Of a stretch of 64,000 bases of DNA, positions 3,902-51,356 are shown one piece after another. The notes beneath the pieces were generated by a model, which was not told where the DNA came from, searched no databases, and saw nothing but the letters and a program-made list of their open reading frames with translations. Numbering within the stretch: the first letter of the stretch is position 1; the number at the start of each line of letters is the position of its first letter. The position numbers and the translations under genes were made by a program. The stretch covers positions 124,001 through 188,000 of the IMG/VR virus record IMGVR_UViG_3300042923_000474. One strand, written 5' to 3'.

Positions 3902-3964
3902 AGCAACACCCATTGGTCAAAAGTTTCTTAATCATACATTAACTTGAAATCGGTGAAGGGCCTT

Positions 3965-12358: not shown

Positions 12359-13153
12359 ATGGCCGCTAAATCAATCAGCTACGGATGTACGGCGCTTTTG
12401 GGCGTCAACAAAAAGGGCATCATTAAACCCGATGCCAACGGCTATTACGAAATCACCGTGGGTGGATTCAACGTCCACAACTACGGTGGTGCGTACTACC
12501 CGCTCGGTAAAGCCGAGCAACTGTTCAAGGATAGCGGGTCGTTGATGCGTCGTATCAAGGCCGGCTGCCTGCGTGGTGAACTGGGGCATCCTCGTCAAGA
12601 GAGCCTCGGTCCATCGGCTTACTTCAAACGGCTGAACGAGATCCACGAAGACAAGGTGTGTGCCCACTTTGCTGAAGTGCGTTTGGACTACGACAACTAC
12701 AAGTCTAAGTCGGGCTTCCCGATGGTGGCTGTGATTGCTCGTGTCAAGCCTGCTGGTCCGTACGCCGACACGCTGCAAAAGTCCTTGGACAACCCCGAGG
12801 AAGAAACCTGCTTCTCCATCCGCGCTGCTGTCGTGCCGGAAATGGAAGGCGGTCGCGAAGTCCGTTACATTGAAGACATCGTGACTTGGGACTATGTGAA
12901 CGAAGGCGGCATTGCCATCGCTCGCAAGTATTACTCCATGGCTTTGGAGAACATGGGCGGTGCTGTAGCCGAACTGTCTGACAACCTGATTGTTACACCT
13001 GCGATGCTGCATGTGGCCAAGCAGAACGTGCAGACAACCATGGGTCTGGAATCCAACGAGATGTTTGCGTTGGACAGTCTGGAGAAGCGCCTGGGCTGGT
13101 CTCGTCCTGCTGAGACCAAGTTCGATCGCCCACGTTACCTGAACTGGAGATAA
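12359..13153 (+). CDS. Prohead (head maturation) serine protease (phiKZ gp175 / T4 gp21-like)
   Basis: GELGHP (His), CFSIR (Ser), TWDYVNEGG (Asp); 264 aa; synteny. Confidence 0.9.
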   Translation: MAAKSISYGCTALLGVNKKGIIKPDANGYYEITVGGFNVHNYGGAYYPLGKAEQLFKDSGSLMRRIKAGCLRGELGHPRQESLGPSAYFKRLNEIHEDKVCAHFAEVRLDYDNYKSKSGFPMVAVIARVKPAGPYADTLQKSLDNPEEETCFSIRAAVVPEMEGGREVRYIEDIVTWDYVNEGGIAIARKYYSMALENMGGAVAELSDNLIVTPAMLHVAKQNVQTTMGLESNEMFALDSLEKRLGWSRPAETKFDRPRYLNWR

Positions 13154-13156
13154 GCG

Positions 13157-13348
13157 ATGGAAGTTGTCTACGCGAATACCGTAAAGCGACAAGCCGCGGA
13201 CAATAAGGTGATCCACTCTGTGGGCACTGCGTTGATCAATGGTTACTCTGCCCGCTGCCTGTTGCGAGTGGGTAAGTTGGAAGCAGGTACGCTTGAGCGT
13301 CACAGTCTTCGACGTGGGCAGCTCATCCCCGCATATTGCCGGCGCTAA
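13157..13348 (+). CDS. Small hypothetical protein
   Basis: GGAG RBS, 63 aa, ends directly at the terminator-like element. Confidence 0.55.
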   Translation: MEVVYANTVKRQAADNKVIHSVGTALINGYSARCLLRVGKLEAGTLERHSLRRGQLIPAYCRR

Positions 13349-13387
13349 CATAATCCCCAGCCCTTTGCGGGGCTGGGGACTTATGCC
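13349..13387. terminator. CATAA-hairpin-TTATGCC terminator-like element
   Basis: CATAA TCCCCAGCCC TTTGC GGGGCTGGGGA C TTATGCC. Confidence 0.75.
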
Positions 13388-13398
13388 ATTGAATGATT

Positions 13399-13423
13399 TT
13401 TCAGACCTAGATTATTCATGTGA
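13399..13423 (+). promoter_or_regulatory. Putative phage early promoter (copy 1 of 4)
   Basis: TTTCAGACCTAGATTATTCATGTGA; aligns without gaps to copies at 14958, 35764 and 62954. Confidence 0.65.
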
Positions 13424-13466
13424 GCATCCCCCAAAGGTGTTCGATTCCCCCAACGAGGTAACACAC

Positions 13467-13733
13467 ATGACTGAGATGATAATCAGGAGAACTCAAGAAC
13501 GAGTCAGTAATCGATACCTAGGAGCGACCTCACAAGTACACGTTTACAACAAGCGTAAAAAGATGTGGGAATGGAAGTCACTGTGGAACTTTCAAGTGTG
13601 TAACAAAGAAGCTGTTACGCAGGAGATACCTCCACCGGGATCTGACGTCATCACACTTACAGCTATCACCCCGACGAATCATTACGAGGATCGGTGTGAG
13701 GATCTTAATTTGAAACATTGGGGAGTTAAGTAA
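13467..13733 (+). CDS. Small hypothetical protein (weak N-x-Q family member)
   Basis: GAGG RBS before ATG 13467; TAATG coupling to the next ORF. Confidence 0.65.
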   Translation: MTEMIIRRTQERVSNRYLGATSQVHVYNKRKKMWEWKSLWNFQVCNKEAVTQEIPPPGSDVITLTAITPTNHYEDRCEDLNLKHWGVK

Positions 13734-13996
13734 TGACCAACGCAGGATTCCACCACTACAGCAATCGTCAAGTTCGTCTGTCTGATGGCAGTGTTCGTTG
13801 TAGTTTTGTGGGACTCCTGGAAGAGGTGGTAGCTGGCGGGGCTCGCAAGGGCTCCGCATCCCGCACCGTCTCTATCCGGGATAAGGCTGGGAGCAAACGG
13901 GTAATCAGCAGGCTGGTCCTCTGCCATCCAACCAAAGGAGTAGTGCGACGTGGCTTCGTCTTCAAACCTCAACAAGCAGCGACGCTCTGGGGATAA
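13733..13996 (+). CDS. Small hypothetical protein, N-x-Q family
   Basis: FHHYSNRQVRLSDG; GGGAG RBS, TAATG overlap. Confidence 0.65.
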   Translation: MTNAGFHHYSNRQVRLSDGSVRCSFVGLLEEVVAGGARKGSASRTVSIRDKAGSKRVISRLVLCHPTKGVVRRGFVFKPQQAATLWG

Positions 13997-14201
13997 TCTG
14001 TACGTCTACCAAATGGTCATGGGCCGTGAGGATGGCGAATTCGAACCAAGGTGGACCGAGAAGGTTTACGCCTTTGGTCATTGTCAATTTTCCCAACACC
14101 ATTCATTCAGCAATGGTCGGGAACGCATCTACGGAGATCCTCCACCGTGGATTAAGGGAGTGTTCAAAGATGAGAAAGACACTCGAACAATCTCTTTCTG
14201 A
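13950..14201 (+). CDS. Small hypothetical protein, N-x-Q family
   Basis: AAGGAG upstream of GTG; SNLNKQRRSGD. Confidence 0.55.
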   Translation: MASSSNLNKQRRSGDNLYVYQMVMGREDGEFEPRWTEKVYAFGHCQFSQHHSFSNGRERIYGDPPPWIKGVFKDEKDTRTISF

Positions 14202-14430
14202 ACATGTCAAAGACTTCATGCTTGTACAGACACGCAATGTTCAGAAAGACGGACAGATTCTGATGGAGCAAGCTCAGATCAGTTTCGGTCCAGATCGTCG
14301 GTTGATGAAGGCGCCTCAAATCGTCTTGATCCATCGGCAGAGTAATGCACCAGCCTTTGCCAGTTACTGGGCAGAGAACGGTACTTTCCGAAAGCGGGGG
14401 TTAAGGAACTTCCATGATCCTGCGTCGTAA
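14170..14430 (+). CDS. Small hypothetical protein, N-x-Q family (start 14170 or 14218)
   Basis: MLVQTRNVQKDG; GGGAG RBS. Confidence 0.6.
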   Translation: MRKTLEQSLSEHVKDFMLVQTRNVQKDGQILMEQAQISFGPDRRLMKAPQIVLIHRQSNAPAFASYWAENGTFRKRGLRNFHDPAS

Positions 14431-14611
14431 CAGCATGCAGATCAACCGTGGCCCTAACGATCAGGTGGGCATGGACTGGGAGTGGACTGCCAAAGGCGTA
14501 AGTCGATTGGTAGCCCATGACATCTCAGGCGGTACGTTTACCTACCACGGGTTGGCTAAGCGTGCAACGTTCTATGCTCGCATACCCCCATGGAAAGGAG
14601 ATGGCACGTAA
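14414..14611 (+). CDS. Small hypothetical protein, N-x-Q-like family
   Basis: AAGGA RBS; MILRRNSMQ; TAATG coupling. Confidence 0.6.
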   Translation: MILRRNSMQINRGPNDQVGMDWEWTAKGVSRLVAHDISGGTFTYHGLAKRATFYARIPPWKGDGT

Positions 14612-14952
14612 TGCTTGTCACCCACACCAACTCGCAATGCAACTTGGGCAATGGCTACACTCAGACCTTTCAGTCTCGGGTGATTAAAGAGCCATCGGCC
14701 AACGAGGTCATTACGGCCAACGTAACCGGTACCAACTTCAAAGACGGTAACGATTACGCGCAGGTGAACCAGATCAGCTCCCATTGGCCCTTCATGGACC
14801 ATGGTGTTGCAAGGTTCCGCAAGTCCTATATCCGTGCTCGACTGATGTCGCCACAGCGTTACTACGAAGAGATGCTGGTTGACAAATCCGACGGTCTTCA
14901 TTTAGACCTAGGTTCCGGTATTACATTGCACGCTGTATGTGATGTGAAATAA
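14611..14952 (+). CDS. Small hypothetical protein, N-x-Q family
   Basis: AAGGAG RBS; MLVTHTNSQCNLGNG. Confidence 0.65.
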   Translation: MLVTHTNSQCNLGNGYTQTFQSRVIKEPSANEVITANVTGTNFKDGNDYAQVNQISSHWPFMDHGVARFRKSYIRARLMSPQRYYEEMLVDKSDGLHLDLGSGITLHAVCDVK

Positions 14953-14957
14953 AGAAA

Positions 14958-14982
14958 TCTGAACCCTAAACTATCAAGTTGA
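14958..14982 (+). promoter_or_regulatory. Putative phage early promoter (copy 2)
   Basis: TCTGAACCCTAAACTATCAAGTTGA. Confidence 0.55.
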
Positions 14983-15065
14983 ACAATGCTTCTTGAAAAG
15001 CTGTTCACACTCATTCCTCTGCCCATGGTCTGGTCAGGGGTCTAACTTTTAAAGGAACGTATTAC

Positions 15066-15563
15066 ATGGCAATCCAAAAGAAGCTGTCCAAAGGCACCAC
15101 CCACTTGCTGGCTCGCCTGGAAGCTGAAGTGAAAGCAGTCATCGGCGACGACAAGATGCCGGGCGATCTGGAAATCACTCTGGACAATGCGAAGCTCGGC
15201 GAAGTGCTGACCGACTATCGCACCACCACTTCCGTCGGTGAGCGCGCAGTGACCGTTGACGACATCGAAGCCGTGGGCAACTTCCGTCGCGATCTGCAGA
15301 ACGCTACCCGCATGTTCGCAGGCGATACTGGCCTGACTTACATGCAGACCAACGAAGACGCTGACAGCTATCGCATCACCGTCAACACCCAGGACAACGC
15401 CCTGTCGGTGCAGTCGGCATTCTTCCGCCCAGGCAAAGAAGAGCAAGGCAACACCAACTTCGTCAGCATCACCGATCAGTGGACCGGCAGCGACGAAGAC
15501 AAGGCGATCGAGAATCACCTGAAAGGCCTGACCAAGACTTTGGCAGGGGCTGTTAAGAAGTAA
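15066..15563 (+). CDS. Hypothetical protein (own promoter and terminator; codon usage suggests high expression)
   Basis: AAGGA RBS, 165 aa; followed by a hairpin and T tract at 15575-15609. Confidence 0.8.
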   Translation: MAIQKKLSKGTTHLLARLEAEVKAVIGDDKMPGDLEITLDNAKLGEVLTDYRTTTSVGERAVTVDDIEAVGNFRRDLQNATRMFAGDTGLTYMQTNEDADSYRITVNTQDNALSVQSAFFRPGKEEQGNTNFVSITDQWTGSDEDKAIENHLKGLTKTLAGAVKK

Positions 15564-15648
15564 TCATCCCCGTTGACCGGCCGCCAAGGATGGCATGCCG
15601 GTCTTTTTTATTCGGTTGTTTCTTTTTTGTTTAGCAGGAGGGGTTCTT

Positions 15649-16680
15649 ATGTTTGGCTTCAATGAGAAGGAAATGCAGGAGGCTGAAAAGCTCGCGGACC
15701 TTTATGACCGTCTGCGCAGGTACGCTCGCGAAGCCAAGGTCAAGGTGATTGTTGCTACCGCAGGTGTTCAGTCTGCTGTGGACGTTACTGACATGACCGT
15801 TAGCTGGCACCCCAGCGAGCCTCGTGTGGTGGACTACCTCAACATCGTTCGCACCAAAGAGCGTCCGGTGTCTGAGAAGATGCATGAGCTGTCCTGGGAC
15901 TTCACCATGCCCATCGGCTACAGTGCCCTGCGCGATGGAGTACGTCAGGTGATGGACGGCGAGAACGACCCTGTCAGACCCTCCCTCACTGCCAAGGATA
16001 TCGCGGCCTTGTTGGAGAAACATCCTGACATGGACAAGTGGACACTCAATGGCGACTTCGTCTATCCGGTAGGTGGCAGTGGTGAGCCAAGTCATCGGAT
16101 TCCTGTCGTGGGTGCAAAGCATGACCACATCAGTGACCGTGATGTTGAGTTCATGTATCAGGGGCGAGCCAGATTGATCGGGGTTAGTACGCCATCGGCT
16201 CGTTCAGACATTCTGGACGACTCGGTCAGGCACACCTACCCACATGGTCGAGTAGAGGCTCAGTTGGGGTTGTCCCGCGAAGACCTGGAAAGCCTTATGC
16301 AGGAATACCCAGTGGGTAAGCTGGACCTGCCGGAGATACTTGCCAAAGCTGCTGAGAAGTTTGGCATCGATCCAGGGGTGCTGGAAGCTGTTATGCGGGT
16401 TGAAAGTGCAGAAGCCTACCGTGATCCCATCATCGTTGGTGGCCGGCAACCTGGGCGTGATACTCGTCTACTTGGCCTGGCGCTTGACCGTCTGGACAAG
16501 GTTGAGACTGTCCATGGGTGGGCTGCTGACTTCGATGGTCAAGTGGCTGGGCCCAAGCGTTTCATCTCCAAGCGACGTTATTGGGGAGAGGGTGCAGATA
16601 CACCAGAAAGCGGTGCACGCAAACGTCGTCAGTCTGACGTGCATGTCAATGGCAAGCCCAAGAAGGGGTGGCAAAAATGA
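15649..16680 (+). CDS. Hypothetical mosaic protein with a short SLT-transglycosylase-like segment
   Basis: AGGAGG RBS; ILAKAAEKFGIDPGVLEAVMRVES plus other motif-like fragments (see findings). Confidence 0.75.
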   Translation: MFGFNEKEMQEAEKLADLYDRLRRYAREAKVKVIVATAGVQSAVDVTDMTVSWHPSEPRVVDYLNIVRTKERPVSEKMHELSWDFTMPIGYSALRDGVRQVMDGENDPVRPSLTAKDIAALLEKHPDMDKWTLNGDFVYPVGGSGEPSHRIPVVGAKHDHISDRDVEFMYQGRARLIGVSTPSARSDILDDSVRHTYPHGRVEAQLGLSREDLESLMQEYPVGKLDLPEILAKAAEKFGIDPGVLEAVMRVESAEAYRDPIIVGGRQPGRDTRLLGLALDRLDKVETVHGWAADFDGQVAGPKRFISKRRYWGEGADTPESGARKRRQSDVHVNGKPKKGWQK

Positions 16681-16877
16681 AAGCTTCTTTTGCATACAGG
16701 CGTTCGGTGGTCAAGGCTAAGCGGGCTCTTAAAGTTCTGGCTGATTACCTCCGAAAGATGTTTAAGCAGATGATGGATTGGGCCGAGAAGTACCGCTCCC
16801 ACATCCAAGCCCAGACCAAACTGCGTCCAGCGTATGGTCGCAACGGCAAGCCACTCAAGAGTTGGCAAGCATGGTGA
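16677..16877 (+). CDS. Small basic hypothetical protein
   Basis: ATGA overlap with the upstream gene; K/R-rich. Confidence 0.65.
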   Translation: MKASFAYRRSVVKAKRALKVLADYLRKMFKQMMDWAEKYRSHIQAQTKLRPAYGRNGKPLKSWQAW

Positions 16878-17161
16878 TGGAACGAGTGCTCCACACCAAT
16901 CGGCAGGAGCGCTTCACTCGTCCAGACGGAACAACCGATCTGTTCTCACGCACCAGTGTGGAAGTGATAGACCTCGTCAATTCTGCACACAACCACGTCA
17001 TGCACATTGACTCTGGTTCTGGCAAGTACGTCACCTCCACCGATCATGAGCGTTTCGTTAAGGTTTGCACCCTTCATGGACCGGTCAGGACTTTCTGGGA
17101 CAAGCGTGTTCCTTTGTCGATAAAGATGCGGGGGTTTCGCCATGATGATTCTGAGGACTAA
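16877..17161 (+). CDS. Small hypothetical protein, N-x-Q family
   Basis: TGATG coupling; VLHTNRQERFTRPDG. Confidence 0.65.
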   Translation: MERVLHTNRQERFTRPDGTTDLFSRTSVEVIDLVNSAHNHVMHIDSGSGKYVTSTDHERFVKVCTLHGPVRTFWDKRVPLSIKMRGFRHDDSED

Positions 17162-17435
17162 TGTTCAGCAATGTACTCTGTTCTCTGATGGGGTGGTGGC
17201 AGTACACACTCACCATACTCAACAGTTACACGAGCAAGGTTTCATGGGTGGCTTTGTCATCAACCACATAGACAACCCAGCCAATCCATCTCGCACCGGC
17301 AGCTTCTACAGCTCCCGCAACGTTAGCTGGGGTGAGGGATCTATTCTTGATCGCGAGGAAAAGCGCAGTGGCCTGTGGCGGGAGACTGGGTTGTCTGTGC
17401 AATTGCAGGGGGTTAGTCGTGGAAATGACGATTAA
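17142..17435 (+). CDS. Small hypothetical protein, N-x-Q family
   Basis: MILRTNVQQCTLFSDG; C-terminus resembles that of the preceding ORF. Confidence 0.65.
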   Translation: MMILRTNVQQCTLFSDGVVAVHTHHTQQLHEQGFMGGFVINHIDNPANPSRTGSFYSSRNVSWGEGSILDREEKRSGLWRETGLSVQLQGVSRGNDD

Positions 17436-17700
17436 ACAAACACAGACACAGGGCGAAGATTGGCGTGGTGCTCAAACCGCTGGCGTACTTTGTCAGATCG
17501 GGGTTGATGAGAACGGGTTCAATTGGTGCAGTACGGTGGGTCACATGACCCGAGAAACGCTCGACAAACCTGCCCCTCACTGGGCGGTTAGTGAACGTAG
17601 CTTTTACGCCGGTCACCTGAACTTCCACGGGTGTCTGAACATTTATGCCAGCGCCTCGTTTAACGAAACACCGCTGTCCGTTGTACCGCGTAAGTTTTAA
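17425..17700 (+). CDS. Small hypothetical protein (weak N-x-Q family member)
   Basis: Overlapping start; MTIKQTQTQ...TPLSVVPRKF. Confidence 0.6.
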   Translation: MTIKQTQTQGEDWRGAQTAGVLCQIGVDENGFNWCSTVGHMTRETLDKPAPHWAVSERSFYAGHLNFHGCLNIYASASFNETPLSVVPRKF

Positions 17701-17761
17701 CCATGCGACTACGGGCGTTCCCTGTAAGTTCGCCCGATAGTTACATACCGAGGATTGTTTC

Positions 17762-17920
17762 ATGGACCGTGATCAAATGAACGAGTTCCTGAATACCGCT
17801 TCACCTGACTGGGACGATGTAGAAGATCGACGAGACTTCTACGCCGCTCAAATGTTTGTATTGATTTTTATTGTCATTGTTTGCCTGGTTCTTTGGGGAG
17901 TATCCAAATGGCTGGGCTAA
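17762..17920 (+). CDS. 52-aa single-pass membrane peptide (below the ORF-track cutoff)
   Basis: GAGGA RBS; MDRDQMNEFLNTASPDWDDVEDRRDFYAAQMFVLIFIVIVCLVLWGVSKWLG. Confidence 0.7.
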   Translation: MDRDQMNEFLNTASPDWDDVEDRRDFYAAQMFVLIFIVIVCLVLWGVSKWLG

Positions 17921-17931
17921 GGGGAAATAAG

Positions 17932-18807
17932 ATGGGCCGTACACTGGAAGACTTTTTCGTACATGGCAAGAAGCACAACTGCCTGTCGAACCGCACATTC
18001 ACCCGCATTGGTGGCGTCCTCTACGAGCAGACGGCTACCGATTGGACGCTGGTCTCTTCGCCTACCTTTCAGGACATCGTCTCTGGCAAGGTGCAGTCCA
18101 AGCCGTTCGGTCAACACCTGCCTGACCATGCAAAGGTCGGCATCCTGGGTGGGATGCGTCCACGTGACGTCTTCAGCCGGGAGCGTGAAGAGAGCATGAC
18201 CAATCAGAACTTCATGGCCAACACTGTGGCAGAGCGTCGGCTGTCTACACGACCGGCGAAGCGTACTCAATTGCAGCTGAGCGAGCTGGCCGTCTCTGGC
18301 CACATGTTCAAAGTGGGTAACCTAGCCCTAGAAGCTGCCGTAGTCGAAAAGTGGATCATGCTGGGCCATCAGGAACCCCAAGTCGAAATGGCTCGGGTGA
18401 TGGAGATCGATCGTCTGGTGAAGGGAAGTGCGATTGCAGCCTCGTTCGTGTGCCGGATCATCAACCACCTGTTCGAACCTGCCGCGGCGATGGACCCCAA
18501 CACCTACGAGTTCACCTCTCGCACCCTGCAAGAGATGAACCACATGCAACTGGGCGACGTGTTCAGGAATGCTCGTCCTGTCAGGATGGCCATCACCGAC
18601 ATCTCCCGTGCGTTCAAGCAGGTGCAGGCAACGTTGCCGCATGTGAAGTACGTTTACTTCAACAACGACCTTAAGTGGAAGTTTGTTGATCGCGACTTCA
18701 AGGCTGTTCAAGTAGACGGCATTATTCCTGATGACGTCTTGGAAACTGCAGTGCTCGCGGCAGTAGACCGCGGCGTACTCAACAAATGGCTGAACCCAGC
18801 CGCTTAA
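17932..18807 (+). CDS. Hypothetical protein
   Basis: AAGGGG RBS, ~291 aa. Confidence 0.75.
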   Translation: MGRTLEDFFVHGKKHNCLSNRTFTRIGGVLYEQTATDWTLVSSPTFQDIVSGKVQSKPFGQHLPDHAKVGILGGMRPRDVFSREREESMTNQNFMANTVAERRLSTRPAKRTQLQLSELAVSGHMFKVGNLALEAAVVEKWIMLGHQEPQVEMARVMEIDRLVKGSAIAASFVCRIINHLFEPAAAMDPNTYEFTSRTLQEMNHMQLGDVFRNARPVRMAITDISRAFKQVQATLPHVKYVYFNNDLKWKFVDRDFKAVQVDGIIPDDVLETAVLAAVDRGVLNKWLNPAA

Positions 18808-18864
18808 AGTTCCACCACTCGACTGTATAGTTTGCAGTCCTCCCAAACCAAGGAGCAATACCCG

Positions 18865-19200
18865 ATGAAACTCGTTATCGTAAACGCTGGTCTGATCGCT
18901 GCTTTCGAGAAAGTTGAAGGCAAAGAAGGCGTGGTTAAAGCCAAGGTTCTCTCTGGCAGCAACAGCGAAGTCGCTCGTCTGACTGCTCTGGGCGGCGCCC
19001 CAATCGATCTGGCCATCGAAGGCCTGACCAAGGGCCACACCCTGACCATGGGCGAAGAAGTTCAGTTCACCGCTGACGGCACTTTCGCCGTTGAGCCTTC
19101 GATCACTGCTCCTGCCGAGAAGGCCGAAGAAGTGCGCAAGACCACCGGCGGCGCAAGCCCTGCCATGCCGGCTGAACGCTCCAATCGTTTCACCAGCTGA
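18865..19200 (+). CDS. Hypothetical protein, likely highly expressed
   Basis: AAGGAG RBS, strong codon bias; followed by hairpin-TTTATGC at 19215-19244. Confidence 0.8.
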   Translation: MKLVIVNAGLIAAFEKVEGKEGVVKAKVLSGSNSEVARLTALGGAPIDLAIEGLTKGHTLTMGEEVQFTADGTFAVEPSITAPAEKAEEVRKTTGGASPAMPAERSNRFTS

Positions 19201-19258
19201 TTAGCACCCGGCCTGCCTCCGTCCTACGGGACGGAGGTTTATGCACTAAGGATAGAAG

Positions 19259-19807
19259 ATGACAACTATCGTTTACAGTCACGATGAGCGCGCTATTGCT
19301 ACCGACAGCCGCGTCATCCGTAACCAAGGCACTAGTGAGGCTGAAATCTCCACCTTTGCCGAAAAGGTCTACACCAGTAAGTGCGGGCGCCTTTACCTGA
19401 CCAAAGCAGGTCCGGGTTGGACTGATGAGTTCTTTGAGAAGGTTGCCGTGGCGTTAATCCCTAAGTTGTTCAAGCTTAAGGACAAACCCAACACCTTGCT
19501 GAACCTTGGTCGATTGATGGCCAATACCAGTCAGGACGTCTTCTCCTACAGTGACACCGTTCTGGCGGTTACAGCTGACGGGGCATACGTGCTAGAAGAG
19601 CGTAAGACACGCATTCTAGCTGCAGGTGACATTGTCGCTATGGGTAGCGGGGAGTATTACTCTCGCGCAGCTGTAGTGGCCGGACAGAGCGTTGTAGACG
19701 CTGTCAAGGTTACCCTTCGATTCGATCGGTTGTCAGGTGGTGGGGTTCATCACTACAAGGCCTCTGATCTTAAGCCAATGGTTCAAGAGGAGATGGTTGA
19801 TGAGTAA
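19259..19807 (+). CDS. Ntn-hydrolase, HslV/proteasome-beta-like peptidase
   Basis: N-terminal MTTIV (Thr nucleophile), ATDSR, EKV, AMGSG, D-x-x-SGGG. Confidence 0.8.
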   Translation: MTTIVYSHDERAIATDSRVIRNQGTSEAEISTFAEKVYTSKCGRLYLTKAGPGWTDEFFEKVAVALIPKLFKLKDKPNTLLNLGRLMANTSQDVFSYSDTVLAVTADGAYVLEERKTRILAAGDIVAMGSGEYYSRAAVVAGQSVVDAVKVTLRFDRLSGGGVHHYKASDLKPMVQEEMVDE

Positions 19808-20378
19808 CCTCTGCCTGTTCAAAGATGAACGCATCCGCTTCTCTCCCATCATCGAAAGTTCCTCCCATCCACCGATCATGCAAGAGCTGGAAGACTGGTT
19901 AACACCGGAAGGTCTGGTTCTGCCGCTGACTCGTGGTGCGTTGGAACTGCGTGAGGTTCTGCTCGACCCGACCTATCACGCTGATCTGATGTATGAAGAC
20001 GGGATCATGGGGTTGGTAGTTCGGCCTAACGGTCGACTGGTAGTAGGTGAGTTCACTCGCAACGAACGTAATCGTTCGCTGACCCGACCTATCTTCATGG
20101 TGCGCCCTACTGGCAAGAATGCCAAATGGGCAATGGCGGGCTCACGACTGGCTGAACAATCAGCGATGGTCATGTTGGAGTTCACTGAGGATCTGAGTAA
20201 GGTCATTGACGACCTCGATCGTATCGAACCGATGCTGACCGGGGGTTACGAGGAATGGGATTATGCGAAGCTTGTCGAATACGTCGCAGGAGAAGTCAAA
20301 GCCCGGTTCCCAGCTAAACCCAAATCTCCCACTCGAAGGGGAATACATACCAGCGACGAAGGGGGAGACTCCGAGTAG
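19800..20378 (+). CDS. Hypothetical protein, possible degenerate Ntn/proteasome-like paralogue
   Basis: Coupled to the HslV-like gene; WAMAGS...LDRIEPMLTGGY parallels AMGSG...LRFDRLSGGGV. Confidence 0.65.
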   Translation: MSNLCLFKDERIRFSPIIESSSHPPIMQELEDWLTPEGLVLPLTRGALELREVLLDPTYHADLMYEDGIMGLVVRPNGRLVVGEFTRNERNRSLTRPIFMVRPTGKNAKWAMAGSRLAEQSAMVMLEFTEDLSKVIDDLDRIEPMLTGGYEEWDYAKLVEYVAGEVKARFPAKPKSPTRRGIHTSDEGGDSE

Positions 20379-20688
20379 TCACTCCTTCGCTGCCGAAGAT
20401 ATCTACGGGTTCGATGAAGTGTTGGAAGCGATTGTTAAACTTGAGGACGTCTTTAAGACGGTGATTGTTAACCCTCAAGTCTCAGACGCAGGAAGAATTC
20501 TACCTGACCTCTTTAATCAAGATGGCACGTTGAATGAAGCGGCAGTTACCGAAAGGAATCGCCGCATAGAAGCCGTACGCGCTCGCCAGAAGATCCAGTC
20601 TGATGTTGATGACTTCATCTGGCGAGTTGGTATGCCACTGTTAGGTGTCATGTTGATTGGCATCGCAGTGATGACACGTTTTATTTAA
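20347..20688 (+). CDS. Hypothetical protein with a C-terminal TM helix (start uncertain)
   Basis: Open frame from 20263; the best SD (AAGGGGA) precedes an ATA at 20347; hydrophobic C-terminus. Confidence 0.55.
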   Translation: MPATKGETPSSHSFAAEDIYGFDEVLEAIVKLEDVFKTVIVNPQVSDAGRILPDLFNQDGTLNEAAVTERNRRIEAVRARQKIQSDVDDFIWRVGMPLLGVMLIGIAVMTRFI

Positions 20689-20724
20689 TCCACTAGAGCC
20701 CCACTTGGGGTAAGGAACCGCCAC

Positions 20725-21108
20725 ATGGCACAAGCAAACACGATTGAACAACAAGTAATGGCGTATCTGGTACAGTGCGCTATTGAACGCCGGACAACTA
20801 CCTACGAAGAGGTGGCTGCCCATTTCGGCTTACCGACCACCTGGCCCCGTTTGAGTCAGGTACTGTCGCCCATTCTCTACCGCATCTATGACTGGTGCGA
20901 TAAGAAACGCCTGCCTAAGCTTACCATTCTTGTGGTGCGTAAGTCGGGTGCCGACATGGCATTGCCGGGTAAAGGCTTCTGGTCGATCAGTGGGTTGCAC
21001 CACACCGACCGCAAGGAACGCATCCTGTTAACCGAAATGTGGACCACGGAAGTGTACGCCTATTTCGAAGTACCCACGACTGGGTTTGAGGGCGGCAATG
21101 GCCATTGA
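20725..21108 (+). CDS. Winged-helix-like DNA-binding protein (TY.E.A ... LP.L..LVV.K.G ... PG.GF family)
   Basis: TTYEEVA, LPKLTILVVRKSG, LPGKGFW; AAGGA RBS. Confidence 0.65.
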   Translation: MAQANTIEQQVMAYLVQCAIERRTTTYEEVAAHFGLPTTWPRLSQVLSPILYRIYDWCDKKRLPKLTILVVRKSGADMALPGKGFWSISGLHHTDRKERILLTEMWTTEVYAYFEVPTTGFEGGNGH

Positions 21109-21340
21109 AGACGAGTACCTGCATATCTACCAGAACATGCAAGGCCGTTATGAAGACGGCCATCGCACGGTTACTTCTCGGGTGGATGTGATCAATGAGG
21201 ATGGGATGTACGTGCGTGAGTTTGAGGAGGAGATCCCGGTTCCCCATCGTAAAGGTGTCGGCACCATCTGGACTCCCAACAGCTTCGACGCCTTCGCAAC
21301 CCCTCCACCCCGCCACCGTTATCGGAGTCGGATCGTATGA
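21098..21340 (+). CDS. Small hypothetical protein, N-x-Q family
   Basis: LHIYQNMQGRYEDG; overlapping start and stop. Confidence 0.65.
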   Translation: MAIEDEYLHIYQNMQGRYEDGHRTVTSRVDVINEDGMYVREFEEEIPVPHRKGVGTIWTPNSFDAFATPPPRHRYRSRIV

Positions 21341-21552
21341 GAGAGCTAAGATTCGTCAACACCCAGTGCCACTCGCCGGATGGCGTTCCTATGGGGCGCT
21401 CTTCGATGTTCACCGTCATGGATCAGGAAGGGCGTGTGGTGGCCTCGCAGTGGGTCAACAAAGAGGGTGGACCTCGCAAGCGCTACACCTTCTACCCCAA
21501 TACCTCGGCCTGGCAGCGTAGCTACCCATTGTCCGAACGGAGGGTGCGATGA
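21337..21552 (+). CDS. Small hypothetical protein, N-x-Q family
   Basis: ATGA overlap; LRFVNTQCHSPDG. Confidence 0.65.
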   Translation: MRELRFVNTQCHSPDGVPMGRSSMFTVMDQEGRVVASQWVNKEGGPRKRYTFYPNTSAWQRSYPLSERRVR

Positions 21553-21755
21553 GTATCCAATACACCAACAAACAAATGCTGGTCATGGGTCCTTACCGTT
21601 GGCCAGAGGAACATCAGGCTCGCGCCTTCTTTACGGTGACCACACCTGAGTACAAAAACTTGGTCAGATTCTGGCCTTGGGATGGCGTGCGAGATCACTT
21701 GTCCATTGGTCCAGACTGGGCGTGGAGTAAGCACTATCCACGTAGCACTCAATGA
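21549..21755 (+). CDS. Small hypothetical protein, N-x-Q family
   Basis: ATGA overlap, GGAGG RBS; IQYTNKQ. Confidence 0.65.
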   Translation: MSIQYTNKQMLVMGPYRWPEEHQARAFFTVTTPEYKNLVRFWPWDGVRDHLSIGPDWAWSKHYPRSTQ

Positions 21756-21973
21756 AGACTCTTCTCTACTACAACCAGCAAAGGCCCGAGGCCCATAGAA
21801 CGAAGGTCGATCATGTAGTCATCGTTGATGGTGAGCGCTGCTACGGTCGATTCACGATCACGCTGACCGATGGTACGGTTGATGACGACTGGGTCTTCAA
21901 CTGCCGCAAGTGGGCGAAGAACATCACGCCTCCTTTCGTTTACAAACCACCGCCTAACTACGAGTTCATCTAA
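21752..21973 (+). CDS. Small hypothetical protein, N-x-Q family
   Basis: ATGA overlap; LLYYNQQ. Confidence 0.65.
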   Translation: MKTLLYYNQQRPEAHRTKVDHVVIVDGERCYGRFTITLTDGTVDDDWVFNCRKWAKNITPPFVYKPPPNYEFI

Positions 21974-22185
21974 TGAGCGACGTTATTACCAGCACGCAGC
22001 GACGACAACTGTCTGGCGAAACCCTCAATACCTACAACCGGTATTTGGGTGGTGGTAACCGTCAACTTGTCTGTCGCTTGACCAACGATAAAGGTGAAAG
22101 TTCGTACGCCATGAATGGCACCTACGATCGTGGGGCCTGTACCAACTACCCGTGGTTCAGGAAAGAAGGGCCACCAGCGTTCTAA
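21973..22185 (+). CDS. Small hypothetical protein, N-x-Q-like family
   Basis: TAATG overlap; ITSTQRRQLSG, similar to the 13950 ORF. Confidence 0.6.
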   Translation: MSDVITSTQRRQLSGETLNTYNRYLGGGNRQLVCRLTNDKGESSYAMNGTYDRGACTNYPWFRKEGPPAF

Positions 22186-22282
22186 GCATTGCTCCCCTAC
22201 CTTCGGGTAGGGGAGTTTATGCCCTCACCTCTTTTTTTTTTGTTCGACGGCATAATGGCCGGGCCGAAGCCCGACCACCACT
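22186..22282. terminator. Back-to-back terminators between convergent units
   Basis: CTCCCCTACC-TTCG-GGTAGGGGAG-TTTATGCCC on plus; GGTCGGGC-TTCG-GCCCGGCC-ATTATGCC on minus. Confidence 0.8.
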
Positions 22283-23158
22283 TTACGCCTGCAGACCAAC
22301 GGCGTTCTGCGCAGCTTCCTCGATCGACTTCTTGTAGCCTCGGCCAGCGGCCTCGACGTCGGCGTGGATGCTGTCGAACGCAGCCGGACGGTTGTTCGGA
22401 GACACGCCAGTCAGGGAGATGCTGTTGAGCACTTCCTGGGCGAACTCGAACACAGCCTGAGTCGACTCGGTCACAGAGGTGAACTCCATGGACAGGGTCA
22501 GCGCAGTGTCGCCTTCTGGCAGGTTGCGAACCATTTCGCGAGGGATACCGGACGAAGGCATCATGTTGCTGAGCAGGGCAGCTTCCACCACGTAGCGGTG
22601 GGTTGGGTCTGGCTCGATGAAGAGCATGCTCATTGACATGAAGTTTTCCAGGATTTCCTCTGGCATGTCCGAGACAGCCATGTGGAGGATTTCCGGGAAC
22701 TTCGTTTCCGGGTTCATCATCGCAGTACGTTGCCAGTAGGTGTAGAAACGGGTGATGACCTTCCCGTACTTCTCCTGATAGCTGAACGAAGGCGTGGATT
22801 CCGCCTGCATCATGTTCTGGATGATTCGCAACTTCTGGCCACCGCCGCCCACTGCAGTTTCTGCAAACTCAGGCGTGATGGTGAGGTTGATACCCTCGAT
22901 GGAGAGTGGATGCTCTTCGACCAGAACCTTGAGGGTTTCGATCAACAGCTGACCACCGTCGATGTAATCCATGAACAGCGGATGCTGAACAAGGATCGGA
23001 ATCATCGACTTCCGGGTGTAAGGGGTGTTGCTGGGCAGTTCGCGGAAGTTGGGCATGAAGCCCATCTGTTGACCCATCCGCGGGTCCACTACGGGCGAGT
23101 ATGCACCCTTCACGAACCCCTGCTTACCCAGCATGCGGTTTACATAGTCGTTTGCCAT
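22283..23158 (-). CDS. Tail tube protein (phiKZ gp30-like)
   Basis: 291 aa, downstream of the sheath gene; MLFIEPDPT motif. Confidence 0.85.
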   Translation of the reverse strand: MANDYVNRMLGKQGFVKGAYSPVVDPRMGQQMGFMPNFRELPSNTPYTRKSMIPILVQHPLFMDYIDGGQLLIETLKVLVEEHPLSIEGINLTITPEFAETAVGGGGQKLRIIQNMMQAESTPSFSYQEKYGKVITRFYTYWQRTAMMNPETKFPEILHMAVSDMPEEILENFMSMSMLFIEPDPTHRYVVEAALLSNMMPSSGIPREMVRNLPEGDTALTLSMEFTSVTESTQAVFEFAQEVLNSISLTGVSPNNRPAAFDSIHADVEAAGRGYKKSIEEAAQNAVGLQA

Positions 23159-23212: not shown

Positions 23213-25288
23213 TTAAGCCGCGGCGGCTACGCCTTCCAGGGCTTCCAGGCGGTTGGTGCGCACGGTGAACGAACCCACGGTACGCAGAGGGCCCATGTAG
23301 AGGTCCACACGGCAAGACCACGAGAAGCCGCGCTTGCTATCCGACGGGGTGAACATGGTGTTTGGAACCACCGTTACACGACCATCGTATTTGCCAGCGA
23401 CTTCTTTGGCGATCAAGTTGTTCGAGCGCTGAATGAACTGCGCTTCGGTGAGACCCTTGATACCGACCAGCTTGGTCCAGACCTTACGGCAGACCTTGAT
23501 GATGTCGACAGCGGCGATCATGTTGAACGCGCCATTGAGCACCGAGGTGTCGTCTTCAAACACGGTCTGATAGGCCGGGATGAATTGGTCACGACGGTCG
23601 ACGTACTGGGCCCAGACGATGCCGTTTTCCCAGAAGTTGTCGATCATTGCTTCGGACTTGCTGCGGGCGTTGATCTCGGTGTAACCCTTGACCACGTTGT
23701 TACCCGGCTCGTCTGGCATCTTCTCACCGTCCCACAGCTGAGTACCGGCACCCATGTACTGGGCGCAGTCGTCTGCGAACTTGTAGGTGAGCGGCACCAC
23801 GGACTTGACTTTCGCCTTCGGCATGGTACCTGCGTGACCGATGATGATCGCGCGGCAGCAACCGGTGCCGTAGAGGGTGGACTCAGGATACGACATGAGT
23901 TCGTTCTTGAGCGCCACGCCGATCGAGTAGTCCTCGTTCTCTTCGTTGGCAGGCTTGCCCCACACCTGGGTAGACAGCACCAGGTAGATGTCATCGCGGT
24001 TAGCGAGCATCTGTGGGAACTTCAGCTTGGTCTCCAACGAGAAGCCCGAGTCGTACATGCAGGACATCGGCACGCGCCAGCGGTCCCACAGACGGGACGG
24101 ATGGTTCATGAAGTTGTCCAGGAAGTCGCCGACGGCCTTGTCGTAAGCTGCGTCATCCAGAGTACCGTCACCGCCGCCTTGAGCGAAGTGAGTGGTGGAC
24201 TCAGTGAAGAGCAGACCGCCGGAGGCAGGACCTTCAACTTCGATCGTGTGATACGGGTAACCCAGGTACGACTGACCAGTCAGGAAGTTAACCATGTGGA
24301 AGTCGTCTTCGGTATCACCAGCGCTACCGAACGGCAGCTCGTCTTCGTGCAGCGCCTTGAGGAACTCTTCAAGGTACTCTTCGTAGACGTGGTAGCCCGA
24401 CCAGGTACCGAAGGTATCTGGACCACCGTCGTCGGACTTGGCATTGTAGGCCTGTTTAAAGGTCTCTTCAATGCCGTATTCGGCAGCAGTGGTTTTGTCG
24501 TACACGCCTTCTTTGAACGAGAAGGTCAGGTACTGGTCACCGTCGATGGTGGTTTGGATCAGCGCGCTGGAGCGATCGTTCTTGCGCTCCATGGCCTGGA
24601 AGCGATACAGGAAAGCACGCTGATCTTCGATCAGGTCTTCACGAGTACCACCCGAGCTGCGGGCAGTCGGCGCGAGAAGGCGGAAGCCACCACGGTCGCC
24701 AGCCTTACCGCGGAACGGACGCTGGAATTCGAACAGTGGATATTTCTCGGAGCTGGAACCATCCTCGTCAGAAACGAGGTCGCCGGTACCAGCCACTTGC
24801 TGACCCAACTCGTTGCCTTTCAGCGCCGAACTGGTGATCTTCACGCGCTTTTTGGCGATGGTTGGAGTGCTCTCATCGACCAGCGGTCCAGTCGGGCCCA
24901 TTTTATAGGTGCCGTCAGAATTACGCTGATAGTTAGGGCGCACGTCTGAGACGTATTCACCCCAGATGGTGATACCTGCAGGCTTTGGAGCATCGGCCGC
25001 AACAATGCGGCAGATCATCTGCTGGTTACCAGCTTCGTTGATAGCTTCCGACAGCAACGATTGATGGCAGAAGTAGCCACCTTTGCGGTCATACATGTCA
25101 TCACCGTACAACCGCTTCATGCGAGCCCCGGAAACGATCTCGTCGGTTTCAGGACCCCAGGAAGTACGGAGCAATAGCAGCGGGGTATGCGTTGCAATCT
25201 GCAACGGTTCTACGGGCAACTGCTGATTAGAGTTGTCCTCGAACCCGTCGAAGAGAAAACGCGGGGCCGCATTTTTAACTGTGGCCAT
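23213..25288 (-). CDS. Contractile tail sheath protein (phiKZ gp29-like)
   Basis: 691 aa; NAAP N-terminus, YDSGFSLETK, YPESTLYGT.CRA, RGFSW. Confidence 0.9.
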   Translation of the reverse strand: MATVKNAAPRFLFDGFEDNSNQQLPVEPLQIATHTPLLLLRTSWGPETDEIVSGARMKRLYGDDMYDRKGGYFCHQSLLSEAINEAGNQQMICRIVAADAPKPAGITIWGEYVSDVRPNYQRNSDGTYKMGPTGPLVDESTPTIAKKRVKITSSALKGNELGQQVAGTGDLVSDEDGSSSEKYPLFEFQRPFRGKAGDRGGFRLLAPTARSSGGTREDLIEDQRAFLYRFQAMERKNDRSSALIQTTIDGDQYLTFSFKEGVYDKTTAAEYGIEETFKQAYNAKSDDGGPDTFGTWSGYHVYEEYLEEFLKALHEDELPFGSAGDTEDDFHMVNFLTGQSYLGYPYHTIEVEGPASGGLLFTESTTHFAQGGGDGTLDDAAYDKAVGDFLDNFMNHPSRLWDRWRVPMSCMYDSGFSLETKLKFPQMLANRDDIYLVLSTQVWGKPANEENEDYSIGVALKNELMSYPESTLYGTGCCRAIIIGHAGTMPKAKVKSVVPLTYKFADDCAQYMGAGTQLWDGEKMPDEPGNNVVKGYTEINARSKSEAMIDNFWENGIVWAQYVDRRDQFIPAYQTVFEDDTSVLNGAFNMIAAVDIIKVCRKVWTKLVGIKGLTEAQFIQRSNNLIAKEVAGKYDGRVTVVPNTMFTPSDSKRGFSWSCRVDLYMGPLRTVGSFTVRTNRLEALEGVAAAA

Positions 25289-37709: not shown

Positions 37710-37804
37710 TGTACAGGGCCTTCCTTCGGGAGGGCCCGCTCTTATGCCCATTCATTTCGAGTGTGCATAAAAGTCTAATCACCAGGTCCTAAGGAGGACT
37801 AGCA

Positions 37805-50418: not shown

Positions 50419-50459
50419 CCCAGTTGGAAGGGGCCGGGGAGTACCCGGCCACTATGCCG

Positions 50460-51344: not shown

Positions 51345-51356
51345 GGCTGCCTCCTC

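What the first reader, a model, noticed from the sequence alone, without database searches (positions are those of the whole stretch)
13467..22185. Dispersed family of ~13 tiny coupled ORFs sharing an N-terminal 'hydrophobic-x-x-N-x-Q ... DG' motif
Seen: three tandem runs (13467-14952, 16877-17700, 21098-22185) of 65-113 aa ORFs joined by ATGA/TAATG or short overlaps. They are otherwise dissimilar but start alike. Clear members: FHHYSNRQVRLSDG (13733), SNLNKQRRSGD (13950), LVQTRNVQKDG (14218), LVTHTNSQCNLGNG (14611), VLHTNRQERFTRPDG (16877), ILRTNVQQCTLFSDG (17142), LHIYQNMQGRYEDG (21098), LRFVNTQCHSPDG (21337), IQYTNKQ (21549), LLYYNQQ (21752). Looser: ILRRNSMQ (14414), VITSTQRR (21973), IIRRTQER (13467), IKQTQTQ (17425). 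Many end in Pro/aromatic tails (PPPWIK, IPPWK, PPFVYKPPP, YPWF, VPLSI/TGLSV/TPLSV). The larger neighbouring ORFs do not start this way. Inference: a highly diversified paralogue library of small beta-rich early proteins, or a shared N-terminal docking/targeting strand for one common partner or scaffold. It could be a variable anti-defence or host-takeover repertoire. I do not recognise it as a described family.
Basis: partly seen in the sequence, partly recalled or inferred. Interest (0 to 1): 0.85.

Follow-up and report, generated by a model that had tools for sequence, protein, structure and literature searches.

The report
New small-protein family in jumbo phage
Fifteen tiny, tightly packed genes in an uncultured phiKZ-like giant phage are real and form a previously undescribed family, recognisable mainly by a shared first beta-strand; they are gained and lost quickly between related phages and their function is still unknown.

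Summary
The window is part of an uncultured phiKZ-like jumbo phage contig. They lie in three translationally coupled arrays between the prohead protease gene and the tail-tube gene.

- **Real genes:** orthologue dN/dS is 0.01-0.30, and substitutions by codon position are 77:52:232.
- **Shared motif:** an ungapped N-terminal block h-L-x-[YFH]-x-N-x-Q-x-R, usually followed by a DG turn. A leave-one-out PSSM beats 709 decoy N-termini for 12 of 14 window genes, and for 21 of 27 with relatives.
- **No known relatives:** Pfam, PHROGs, PDB, BFVD, GenBank phages and an exhaustive HMMER scan of 1.84 billion proteins find nothing outside about five related metagenomic phages. About 80 other jumbo-phage loci lack the family.
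- **Structure:** AlphaFold2 puts the motif in strand 1 of an N-terminal hairpin in an all-beta protein.
- **Turnover:** related phages differ by single-gene gains and losses.

Best reading: a lineage-specific, fast-diverging paralogue family of small beta-sheet accessory proteins. "Early" expression is not supported. A T4-CTS-like address tag remains a minority alternative, but no protease site follows the block.

The parts
13157..13348 (+). It starts 3 nt after the protease stop.
   Evidence: PSSM score 10.0, the best true non-seed N-terminus in the window. Orthologues in L092 (MTIQYSSYQRR, 15.6 bits) and L097. Junction.
13355..13415 (+). Conserved intergenic element upstream of run 1: GC hairpin 13355-13378, TTATGCC 13381-13387, ACCTAGATTAT 13405-13415. 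Putative terminator plus late-type promoter.
   Evidence: Conserved in L002, L091, L092 and L003 with compensatory stem changes. TATG is the phiKZ late-promoter consensus (PMC4666361).
13467..13733 (+). Member, 88 aa (MTEMIIRRTQERV); variant motif with T-Q.
   Evidence: LOO PSSM p=0.003. Orthologue in L002 at 90% identity; substitutions by codon position 8:2:47.
13733..13996 (+). Member, 87 aa (FHHYSNRQVRLSDG).
   Evidence: p=0.006. dN/dS 0.13. Its L091 and L098 orthologues give a BLASTP link to L091_7720, in the 21098 group of run 3.
13950..14201 (+). Member, 83 aa, GTG start behind AAGGAG (SNLNKQRRSGD); PPW-type tail.
   Evidence: p=0.079. dN/dS 0.30. HHalign link to L003_11489 at 65% probability. 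PPW tail.
14218..14430 (+). Member, 70 aa (MLVQTRNVQKDG); found only in this phage, no clear SD.
   Evidence: p=0.037. Absent from L002, L091 and L098. Annotated frame has the best codon score.
14414..14611 (+). Member, 65 aa (MILRRNSMQ); PPW-type tail; found only in this phage.
   Evidence: p=0.044. PPW tail. HHalign link to the 21337 group at 35% probability.
14611..14952 (+). Member, 113 aa (MLVTHTNSQCNLGNG).
   Evidence: p=0.001. dN/dS 0.15. C-terminal half related to L003_11106, HHalign 91% probability.
16877..17161 (+). Member, 94 aa (VLHTNRQERFTRPDG); PLSI tail; absent from L002.
   Evidence: p=0.004. PLSI tail. No tblastn match in L002.
17142..17435 (+). Member, 97 aa (ILRTNVQQCTLFSDG); GLSV tail.
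   Evidence: p=0.025. dN/dS 0.13. AF2 predicts all-beta with the motif in strand E5-15 and DG in the turn, but pLDDT is only 54.
17425..17700 (+). Member by its C-terminal PLSV motif and position; N-terminal motif weak (MTIKQTQTQ), 91 aa.
   Evidence: p=0.47 for the N-terminal block. PLSV tail. dN/dS 0.07.
21098..21340 (+). Member, 80 aa (LHIYQNMQGRYEDG).
   Evidence: p=0.001. dN/dS 0.17. Orthologues in L002, L008/L091 and L098.
21337..21552 (+). Member, 71 aa (LRFVNTQCHSPDG); PLSE tail; the most constrained member.
   Evidence: p=0.003. dN/dS 0.01, with 1 aa change against dS 0.55.
21549..21755 (+). Member, 68 aa (SIQYTNKQ).
   Evidence: p=0.001. Orthologue in L098 (LTYTNLQMLVMGP).
21752..21973 (+). 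Member, 73 aa (LLYYNQQ).
   Evidence: p=0.001. dN/dS 0.24. AF2 pLDDT 69, pTM 0.52: four-stranded antiparallel meander, E4-12, E16-25, E28-38, E43-50.
21973..22185 (+). Member, 70 aa (VITSTQRRQLSGE); YPW tail; absent from L002.
   Evidence: p=0.030. YPW tail.
22192..22223 (+). GC hairpin (TTCG loop) plus TTATGCC closing run 3. A mirror-image copy on the minus strand follows the tail-tube gene.

Best explanation
These genes are a lineage-specific, rapidly diverging multigene family of small, soluble, all-beta proteins in a narrow clade of uncultured phiKZ-like jumbo phages.

**Genes and expression.** The genes sit in three tandem arrays at fixed hot spots between conserved backbone genes: after the prohead protease, after the 361-aa and 69-aa gene pair, and before the tail-tube terminator. 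They are translated from polycistronic mRNAs by coupling.

**The motif.** The shared signature h-L-x-Y-x-N-x-Q-x-R...DG is the first strand and turn of an N-terminal beta-hairpin. Its alternating residues (Leu, Tyr, Asn, Gln, Arg) lie on one face of that strand. This hairpin is the one element that all paralogues have kept, either as a folding core or as a common contact surface.

**Divergence and turnover.** The rest of each protein has diverged beyond recognition between paralogues but is held under purifying selection within each orthologue line. Copies are gained and lost one gene at a time between close relatives. That is the behaviour of accessory genes.

**Function (inferred).** Each copy probably binds a different host or defence factor.

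**Shown:** real genes, real motif, clade restriction, turnover, predicted beta-hairpin. **Inferred:** common fold for all members, binder function, and timing (probably not early).
For: - **Coding:** dN/dS is 0.01-0.30 in 8 W/L002 orthologue pairs; in a ninth, 13467, dS is saturated (pN 0.048, pS 0.86). The protease gives 0.10. Substitutions by codon position are 77:52:232. The annotated frame has the best codon score for 14 of 15.
- **Motif:**
- **Motif replicated in relatives not used to define it:** L003 run 1 has 8 dissimilar members beginning LRYxNxQ-like, and L008/L091/L098 have others.
- **Common descent beyond the N-terminus for about half of the 26 groups:** PLSV and PPW C-terminal motifs, BLASTP links between groups in different runs and genomes, and HHalign links at 35-91% probability.
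- **Structure:** both AF2 models are all-beta, with the block as strand 1 and DG or PEA in the first turn. Composition is poor in Ala, Leu, Lys and Glu, and rich in His, Thr, Tyr, Trp and Arg.
- **Turnover:** W and L002 (protease 91% identical) differ by single-gene presence or absence at all three hot spots. L003 has all its copies at hot spot 1.
- **Clade restriction:**
Against: - With the block masked, 321 of 325 group pairs are no more similar than the reversed controls, and leave-one-out HMMs fail. A common fold for all members therefore rests on two AF2 models of modest confidence (pLDDT 54 and 69) and on partial C-terminal motifs.
- Foldseek gives no significant match, so the fold gives no functional lead.
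- Among orthologues the block is no more conserved than the rest of the protein (60% against 59% identity). It does not stand out as a special site.
- There is no direct evidence for any target, for timing or for translation. The host is unknown.
- Only 64 kb of the 232-kb genome was searched.
Confidence: 0.5

Rival explanations
1. The N-terminal block is an address tag shared by otherwise unrelated cargo proteins. One version is a capsid-targeting signal that docks the proteins into the prohead core, making them ejected effectors as with T4 internal proteins and their CTS. Another is a signal for sorting relative to the phage nucleus.
For: - Only the N-terminus is shared by all members.
- Run 1 begins 3 nt after the prohead protease gene.
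- The arrays share a strand with virion genes, and run 1 follows a TATG-containing element that also precedes a virion-protein gene array.
- The repertoire is hypervariable between relatives. This parallels the diverse T-even internal proteins, which share only a CTS (PMC3012670; PMC7411985).
Against: - No prohead-protease site follows the block. [SAG]-x-E at residues 10-45 occurs in 9 of 28 members, equal to the 33% expected by chance.
- The motif is degenerate (a pattern, not a near-identical peptide) and alternates like a beta-strand.
- AF2 builds it into the sheet in both models.
- C-terminal motifs and body similarity link many groups, so the bodies are not unrelated cargo.
- The family is absent from other phiKZ-like phages that share the same protease and head genes.
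Confidence: 0.2
2. The proteins are small nucleic-acid-binding proteins. The exposed Asn, Gln and Arg on the first hairpin would read DNA or RNA, as the beta-strands of Arc/MetJ or WRKY domains do. The paralogues would then act as regulators or RNA-processing cofactors.
For: - Asn, Gln and Arg alternate on one strand face next to a hairpin tip.
- 17 of 28 members have pI above 8.
- The weak structural neighbours are four-stranded sheet nucleic-acid binders (PUR repeat, probability 0.90; WRKY; PC4-like) and T4 Cef, but at E=0.04-1.
- That Arc Gln9/Asn11/Arg13 and WRKY strands contact bases is from my own knowledge.
Against: - No structural match is significant.
- There are no conserved Zn ligands and no helices of the RHH type.
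- Charges are mixed, with pI from 4.8 to 11.5.
- A single shared reading head would not explain why so many paralogues are kept.
Confidence: 0.1
3. The ORFs are not independent genes. They would be chance ORFs, or the fragments of a decayed large repeat-containing gene.
For: - Amino-acid composition (high Arg, His, Cys, Trp) resembles off-frame translation of 53% GC DNA.
- Codon bias is weak: GC3 is 0.58 against 0.65-0.75 in structural genes.
- One L002 copy carries a premature stop.
Against: - Purifying selection and third-position excess occur in exactly these frames.
- Starts, stops and SD-like sites are conserved in relatives.
- The motif recurs right after each start codon.
- There is no similarity to any larger protein.
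Confidence: 0.02

Closest known systems
T-even phage internal proteins (IPI, IPII, IPIII and the variable IP-locus ORFs) carrying the capsid targeting sequence
   Same: A set of small, mutually dissimilar proteins that share only their N-terminus. They are encoded in a locus whose content differs between related phages. At least some are anti-restriction effectors (PMC3012670; PMC7411985).
   Different: - The T4 CTS is a 10-20 aa propeptide removed by the prohead protease; that it is nearly identical between the internal proteins is from my own knowledge. Here the block is a degenerate strand pattern.
- AF2 predicts the block to be part of the fold.
- No cleavage motif follows it.
- Packaging has not been tested.
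Lineage-specific expansions of small domains in jumbo phages (for example about 35 zinc-ribbon copies in Bacillus phage G)
   Same: Many paralogous small genes confined to one phage lineage (PMC7824862).
   Different: Those expansions involve a recognisable known domain. This family matches no Pfam, PHROG or PDB entry.
Anti-defence (Acr-type) accessory gene islands of phages
   Same: Tandem, tightly coupled small ORFs without database hits. They turn over gene by gene between close relatives while kept copies are under purifying selection. HTH genes are adjacent (a weak EutK_C-like hit).
   Different: Acr islands hold unrelated proteins without a shared signature. No inhibition has been tested, and the host is unknown.
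Eukaryotic pathogen effector families marked by short N-terminal motifs (Y/F/WxC of powdery mildew; RxLR)
   Same: Small, fast-evolving proteins whose only common feature is a short motif near the N-terminus (PMC2886064, listed).
   Different: This is a different kingdom and cell biology. Those motifs follow a signal peptide; here there is none. The comparison is an analogy only.
Four-stranded beta-meander small proteins (PUR repeat, WRKY domain, T4 Cef)
   Same: Same strand count and order as the AF2 model of 21752-21973.
   Different: Matches are not significant (E=0.04 or worse, TM about 0.45-0.55) and there is no sequence similarity.

Membership tests
T4-type CTS-bearing internal/ejection proteins | Otherwise dissimilar small proteins share an N-terminal leader and sit in a locus that varies between related phages | tested here: met
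   shared block only; variable content.
T4-type CTS-bearing internal/ejection proteins | The leader ends at a prohead-protease cleavage site (T4 L/I-x-E; giant phages A/S/G-x-E) | tested here: not met
   [SAG]-x-E at residues 10-45 occurs in 9 of 28 members, against 33% expected by chance, and at no aligned position. The AXE motif is from PMC7411985.
T4-type CTS-bearing internal/ejection proteins | The leader is a detachable peptide outside the mature fold | tested here: inconclusive
   AF2 places the block in strand 1, paired with strand 2, in both models, but pLDDT is only 54 and 69.
T4-type CTS-bearing internal/ejection proteins | The protein is present in the capsid and ejected | not testable with these tools
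   No cultured member and no proteome.
Any curated protein family (Pfam-A, PHROGs) | Profile match above the family threshold | tested here: not met
   No hit below E=0.004 for any of the 15, and no family is hit by more than 1 of 27 members.
phiKZ-type paralogous virion proteins (phrog_1037) | Profile match to phrog_1037/2935/3589 | tested here: not met
   The 46.4-54.8 kb array matches these profiles. The small ORFs do not.
WRKY / PUR-repeat / PC4-like beta-sheet nucleic-acid binders | Significant structural match; for WRKY, also conserved C-C-H-H zinc ligands | tested here: not met
   Foldseek E is 0.75 or worse, TM 0.39-0.45. No conserved Cys or His columns in A2 or A3.
T4 Cef-like proteins | Significant structural or sequence match | tested here: inconclusive
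   Best BFVD hits are E=0.043 and 0.13, TM 0.46-0.54, over 45-54 residues. No sequence match.
Anti-defence accessory island | Small tandem ORFs with gene-by-gene turnover between close relatives | tested here: met
Anti-defence accessory island | Demonstrated inhibition of a host defence system | not testable with these tools
   Host unknown; no experiment possible.

The most novel reading that the evidence does not exclude
The L-x-Y-x-N-x-Q-x-R hairpin is a portable address strand. It would dock a hypervariable set of small effectors onto one phage machine by beta-strand addition. The machine could be the prohead core or inner body (making the proteins ejected effectors) or the sorting apparatus of the phage nucleus. 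That would be a beta-strand counterpart of the T4 capsid targeting sequence, and the first linear sorting signal in a phiKZ-like phage.
Probability: 0.15. Interest if true: 0.8.

Novelty: new variant of a known kind. Interest (0 to 1): 0.4.

Why it matters
Jumbo phages carry large numbers of small genes of unknown function. Rules for grouping them are scarce, because the proteins diverge beyond the reach of sequence searches.

- **A grouping rule.** A 12-residue N-terminal strand signature ties together at least 26 orthologue groups that BLAST, HMMER and HHalign mostly cannot connect. It also marks three hot spots of gene turnover inside an otherwise conserved structural-gene block.
- **If the proteins are binders.** The family would be a compact natural library of about 70-residue beta-sheet scaffolds with one fixed hairpin.
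- **If the strand is an address tag.** It would give a handle on how phiKZ-like phages sort or package small proteins, which is an open question.

The family is rare, seen in a handful of metagenomic contigs, and has no cultured host. Its immediate reach is therefore limited.

Tried and rejected
**Searches that found nothing**
- Megablast of the region against GenBank phages gave no match.
- tblastn of three members against the same collection at E up to 1 gave no match.
- Pfam and PHROGs on every member gave only noise.
- The ESM Atlas look-alike search gave no informative cluster.
- A profile search of PDB sequences gave only chance hits, such as colicin M at E=0.03.
- Foldseek against PDB and BFVD gave nothing significant.
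- The third fold search was not spent on the pLDDT-54 model, because matches to it would be meaningless.

**Tests of family-wide homology**
- HMM-based family detection: the first HMM search only re-found its own seeds, and leave-one-out HMMs fail. I switched to an N-terminus-anchored PSSM with decoys.
- HHalign of orthologue-group profiles with the block masked is mostly at control level. Full-length homology of all groups is therefore not demonstrated.

**Alternative explanations tested and rejected**
- A nucleotide-level repeat or recombination cassette at gene starts is rejected. The codons differ synonymously and the DNA is not conserved.
- A protease-cleaved leader is rejected.
- The block as an especially conserved site among orthologues is rejected.
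- The 47075-47221 ORF, which scores 15.3, is rejected as chance. It has a TTG start, is 48 aa, and lies inside a minus-strand phrog_1037 gene.

**Other dead ends**
- A sigma-70 promoter and intrinsic terminator scan found no more sites than in shuffled sequence.
- A search for AT-rich early-promoter-like stretches found only 2 in 64 kb.
- The syntenic intervals of cultured relatives (Xanthomonas phage RTH11, Ralstonia phage RP12) and about 80 IMG/VR jumbo-phage loci hold no members.

Full report
**Context**

The window is positions 124001-188000 of IMG/VR contig IMGVR_UViG_3300042923_000474, which is 231,724 bp long. It belongs to an uncultured phiKZ-like jumbo phage.
- PHROG profiles identify split multisubunit RNA polymerase beta genes (3944-5584, 5587-9942), a virion protein (11630-12352), the prohead protease (12359-13153) and the tail sheath (23213-25288, minus strand).
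- The gene at 22283-23158 (minus) is the tail tube, by the Pfam tag on its orthologue.
- Nothing in GenBank phages matches at DNA level. The tail sheath is at most 38% identical to cultured phages.
- The order RNAP - virion protein - protease - variable interval - tail tube - sheath is shared with Xanthomonas phage RTH11 and Ralstonia phage RP12.
- The finding occupies the variable interval, 13153-22283.

- All 14 ORFs are present with the stated N-termini.
- They are joined by TAATG/TGATG, ATGA, overlaps of 11-47 nt, or gaps of 3-16 nt, mostly behind SD-like purine runs.
- They are real genes. Nine have orthologues in the closest relative (L002, protease 91% identical). dN/dS is 0.01-0.30 in eight of them, against 0.10 for the protease; in 13467 dS is saturated (pN 0.048, pS 0.86).
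- Their substitutions fall 77:52:232 on codon positions 1:2:3.
- The annotated frame has the best codon-usage score of six frames for 14 of 15 members. Bias is weaker than in structural genes: GC3 is 0.58 against 0.65-0.75.

**The motif is more than chance**
- Aligned without gaps it is a 12-residue block, h-L-x-[Y/F/H]-x-N-x-Q-x-R-x-x, usually followed within a few residues by DG.
- Asn and Gln are encoded by both synonymous codons, so the constraint is on the protein.
- I built a position-specific matrix leaving out each member and its orthologues. I scored it against 709 decoy N-termini, taken from every ATG with at least 50 codons downstream on both strands outside the runs.
- 12 of 14 window ORFs reach p<0.05. 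The exceptions are 13950 at 0.079 and 17425 at 0.47. With members from relatives, 21 of 27 reach p<0.05.
- The matrix also picks out a 15th member, 13157-13348, which starts 3 nt after the protease stop. Its orthologue in another relative reads MTIQYSSYQRR.
- No larger ORF and no other region of the 64 kb scores comparably. One 48-aa TTG ORF inside a minus-strand virion gene is taken as chance.

**Replication in relatives**

Protease-anchored and tail-tube-anchored loci from IMG/VR and JGI metagenomes, plus one Logan contig, give about five related phages.
- The phage with 75% protein identity (L003) has none of the window's small genes by tblastn. It nevertheless carries eight different small ORFs right after its protease, starting SLRYCNTV, MRYENQQ, RLKYTHMT, IKYSNSQ, RIRYESHQ, MLRYRSHN, NLRYESVI and MLRHHRLQ.
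- L008/L091/L098 add LTFTNRQVREEDG, LYIYNKQ, KLRYIVDQ, MWCSNKQ, LEYNVQQ and LTYTNLQ.
- In all, 55 sequences fall into 26 BLAST groups.
- W and L002 differ by presence or absence of single genes at all three hot spots. 14218, 14414, 16877, 21549 and 21973 are absent from L002. L002 has two genes that W lacks.

**Restriction to this clade**
- An HMM and the matrix find no member in the other fetched jumbo-phage loci, about 90 loci and 1.7 Mb. Hits are isolated, about 8 among 25,660 small-ORF starts.
- The syntenic genes of RTH11 and RP12 do not carry the motif. One 45-aa RTH11 ORF beginning MVRTLQNRQ is taken as chance.
- A profile search of 5.8 billion proteins returns 7 proteins, all from this clade.
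- An exhaustive HMMER scan of 1.84 billion representatives returns 8, again all from this clade.
- The 113-aa member has only three homologues.
- tblastn of three members against GenBank phages at E up to 1 finds nothing.

**What the proteins share beyond the block**
- Pairwise BLASTP within the window is empty, and leave-one-out HMMs fail.
- With the block cut off, HHalign of the 26 group profiles beats the 99th percentile of a reversed-sequence control in only 4 of 325 pairs.
- Links do exist. PLS[VIE]/GLSV near the C-terminus occurs in 6 of 28 members against 4 of 511 controls: all three run-2 genes (16877, 17142, 17425), 21337 and its L008 orthologue, and L003_12278.
- A PPW-type tail occurs in 4 of 28 against 2 of 511.
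- BLASTP joins the 13733 group (run 1) to the 21098 group (run 3), the 14611 group to L003_11106, and two L003 genes to each other.
- About half of the groups are thus connected outside the N-terminus. This favours divergence from one ancestor over independent acquisition of a tag.
- Within orthologue groups the block is no more conserved than the rest (60% against 59% identity, p=0.79). Each paralogue's body is as constrained as its N-terminus. Only the pattern L/Y/N/Q/R survives between paralogues.

**Structure**
- AF2 with family alignments gives all-beta models.
- 17142-17435 has pLDDT 54, with strands 5-15 and 18-29 flanking the SDG turn.
- 21752-21973 has pLDDT 69 and pTM 0.52, with about 80 over residues 11-50. 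It is a four-stranded antiparallel meander (4-12, 16-25, 28-38, 43-50) plus a short helix.
- In both models the block is strand 1. The conserved alternating residues therefore share one face.
- Foldseek finds nothing significant. The best PDB hits have E of 0.3 or worse (PUR repeat, WRKY, cystatin-like scaffolds). The best viral hits have E=0.04-0.13 (T4-type Cef).
- Composition fits beta-rich, hydrophilic proteins: His 2.25-fold, Cys 1.9-fold and Arg 1.5-fold enriched, with Ala, Leu, Ile and Lys depleted. pI ranges from 4.8 to 11.5. There are no hydrophobic segments.

**Testing the address-tag idea**

The closest precedent is the T-even internal proteins: diverse, often anti-restriction, and sharing only a capsid targeting sequence that the prohead protease removes (PMC3012670; PMC7411985).
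- In favour: the position next to the protease gene, and the turnover between relatives.
- Against: the giant-phage cleavage motif A/S/G-x-E follows the block in 9 of 28 members, which is the chance rate, and at no aligned position.
- Against: the block is a degenerate strand pattern rather than a fixed peptide.
- Against: AF2 builds it into the sheet.
- Uncleaved docking by strand addition is not excluded.

**Timing**
- "Early" has no support.
- Between 13157-13348 and run 1 lies a GC hairpin (13355-13378) followed by TTATGCC (13381-13387).
- TTATGCC occurs 11 times in the window against 4.7 expected, and 0 of 100 shuffles reach 11. At 8 sites it directly follows a GC hairpin, often with a TTCG loop.
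- Several sites lie 40-100 nt upstream of same-strand genes. One of those genes is the first of the phrog_1037 virion-protein array.
- The element is conserved with compensatory stem changes upstream of run-1 orthologues in four relatives.
- It contains TATG, the phiKZ late-promoter consensus (PMC4666361).
- This suggests late-type transcription of run 1, but it is inference only. In the convergent gap 22186-22282 the same element follows both gene ends, so a role in termination is also possible.

**Verdict**

The finding is a real, previously undescribed, clade-restricted family of small beta-sheet proteins. A conserved first hairpin defines it. The genes are arranged in three coupled arrays that turn over gene by gene.
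- Most likely (0.5): they are diverged paralogues whose first hairpin is the retained core or common contact, acting as accessory binders of host or defence factors.
- Minority alternatives: an address tag (0.2) and nucleic-acid binding (0.1).
- Function is not established by any result here.
- The phenomenon of lineage-specific small-gene expansions in hypervariable phage regions is known (PMC7824862). The family and its signature are new.

Noticed in passing
window 13355-13387(+), 22192-22223(+), 22249-22280(-), about 37700-37748(+), about 42940-42988(+), 54817-54860(-), 59743-59782 (both strands): A recurrent regulatory element: a GC-rich hairpin, often with a TTCG tetraloop, immediately followed by TTATGCC(C). 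TTATGCC occurs 11 times against 4.7 expected. The element is conserved with compensatory stem changes in relatives. It contains the phiKZ late-promoter TATG and precedes several genes by 40-100 nt, including a virion-protein gene array. In one convergent gap it follows both gene ends. It is probably a terminator plus late-type promoter unit.
   Followed up: partly
window 13405-13415 and 62960-62970 (+): A second motif, ACCTAGATYAT, lies 24-33 nt downstream of two of the TTATGCC sites. It is conserved upstream of run-1 orthologues in relatives. Its role is unknown.
   Followed up: partly
window 46442-47533 and 49525-54777 (-): A tandem array of seven paralogous genes (255-363 aa) matching phrog_1037/2935/3589 virion structural proteins, a larger known paralogue family in this phage.
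   Followed up: partly
window 19259-19807 (+): An HslV-family peptidase-like gene (phrog_1040, E=8e-13) sits between runs 2 and 3. It is conserved in relatives, and an N-terminally similar gene lies at the corresponding position in Xanthomonas phage RTH11, which lacks the small family.
   Followed up: no
L002 11602-11853: The L002 orthologue of 13950-14201 carries a premature stop (67 aa instead of 83-84 aa in the window and in L097). This is a sign of ongoing decay of individual copies.
   Followed up: partly
window 20725-21108 (+); L091 3704-4024: A conserved 127-aa gene with a weak winged-helix-like hit (EutK_C, E=0.007, below threshold) directly precedes and overlaps run 3. In L091 an XRE-type HTH-looking ORF precedes the run-2 member. 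These are possible local regulators.
   Followed up: no
window 17762-17920 (+): A 52-aa ORF with a C-terminal hydrophobic segment (FVLIFIVIVCLVLWGV) directly follows run 2 and is conserved in L002. It is not a family member.
   Followed up: no
L076 10882-11205: A single small ORF starting MLMRINSQGRQ lies right after the protease in a distant jumbo phage (protease 38% identical), PSSM score 11.2. It is either a lone distant member or chance.
   Followed up: no
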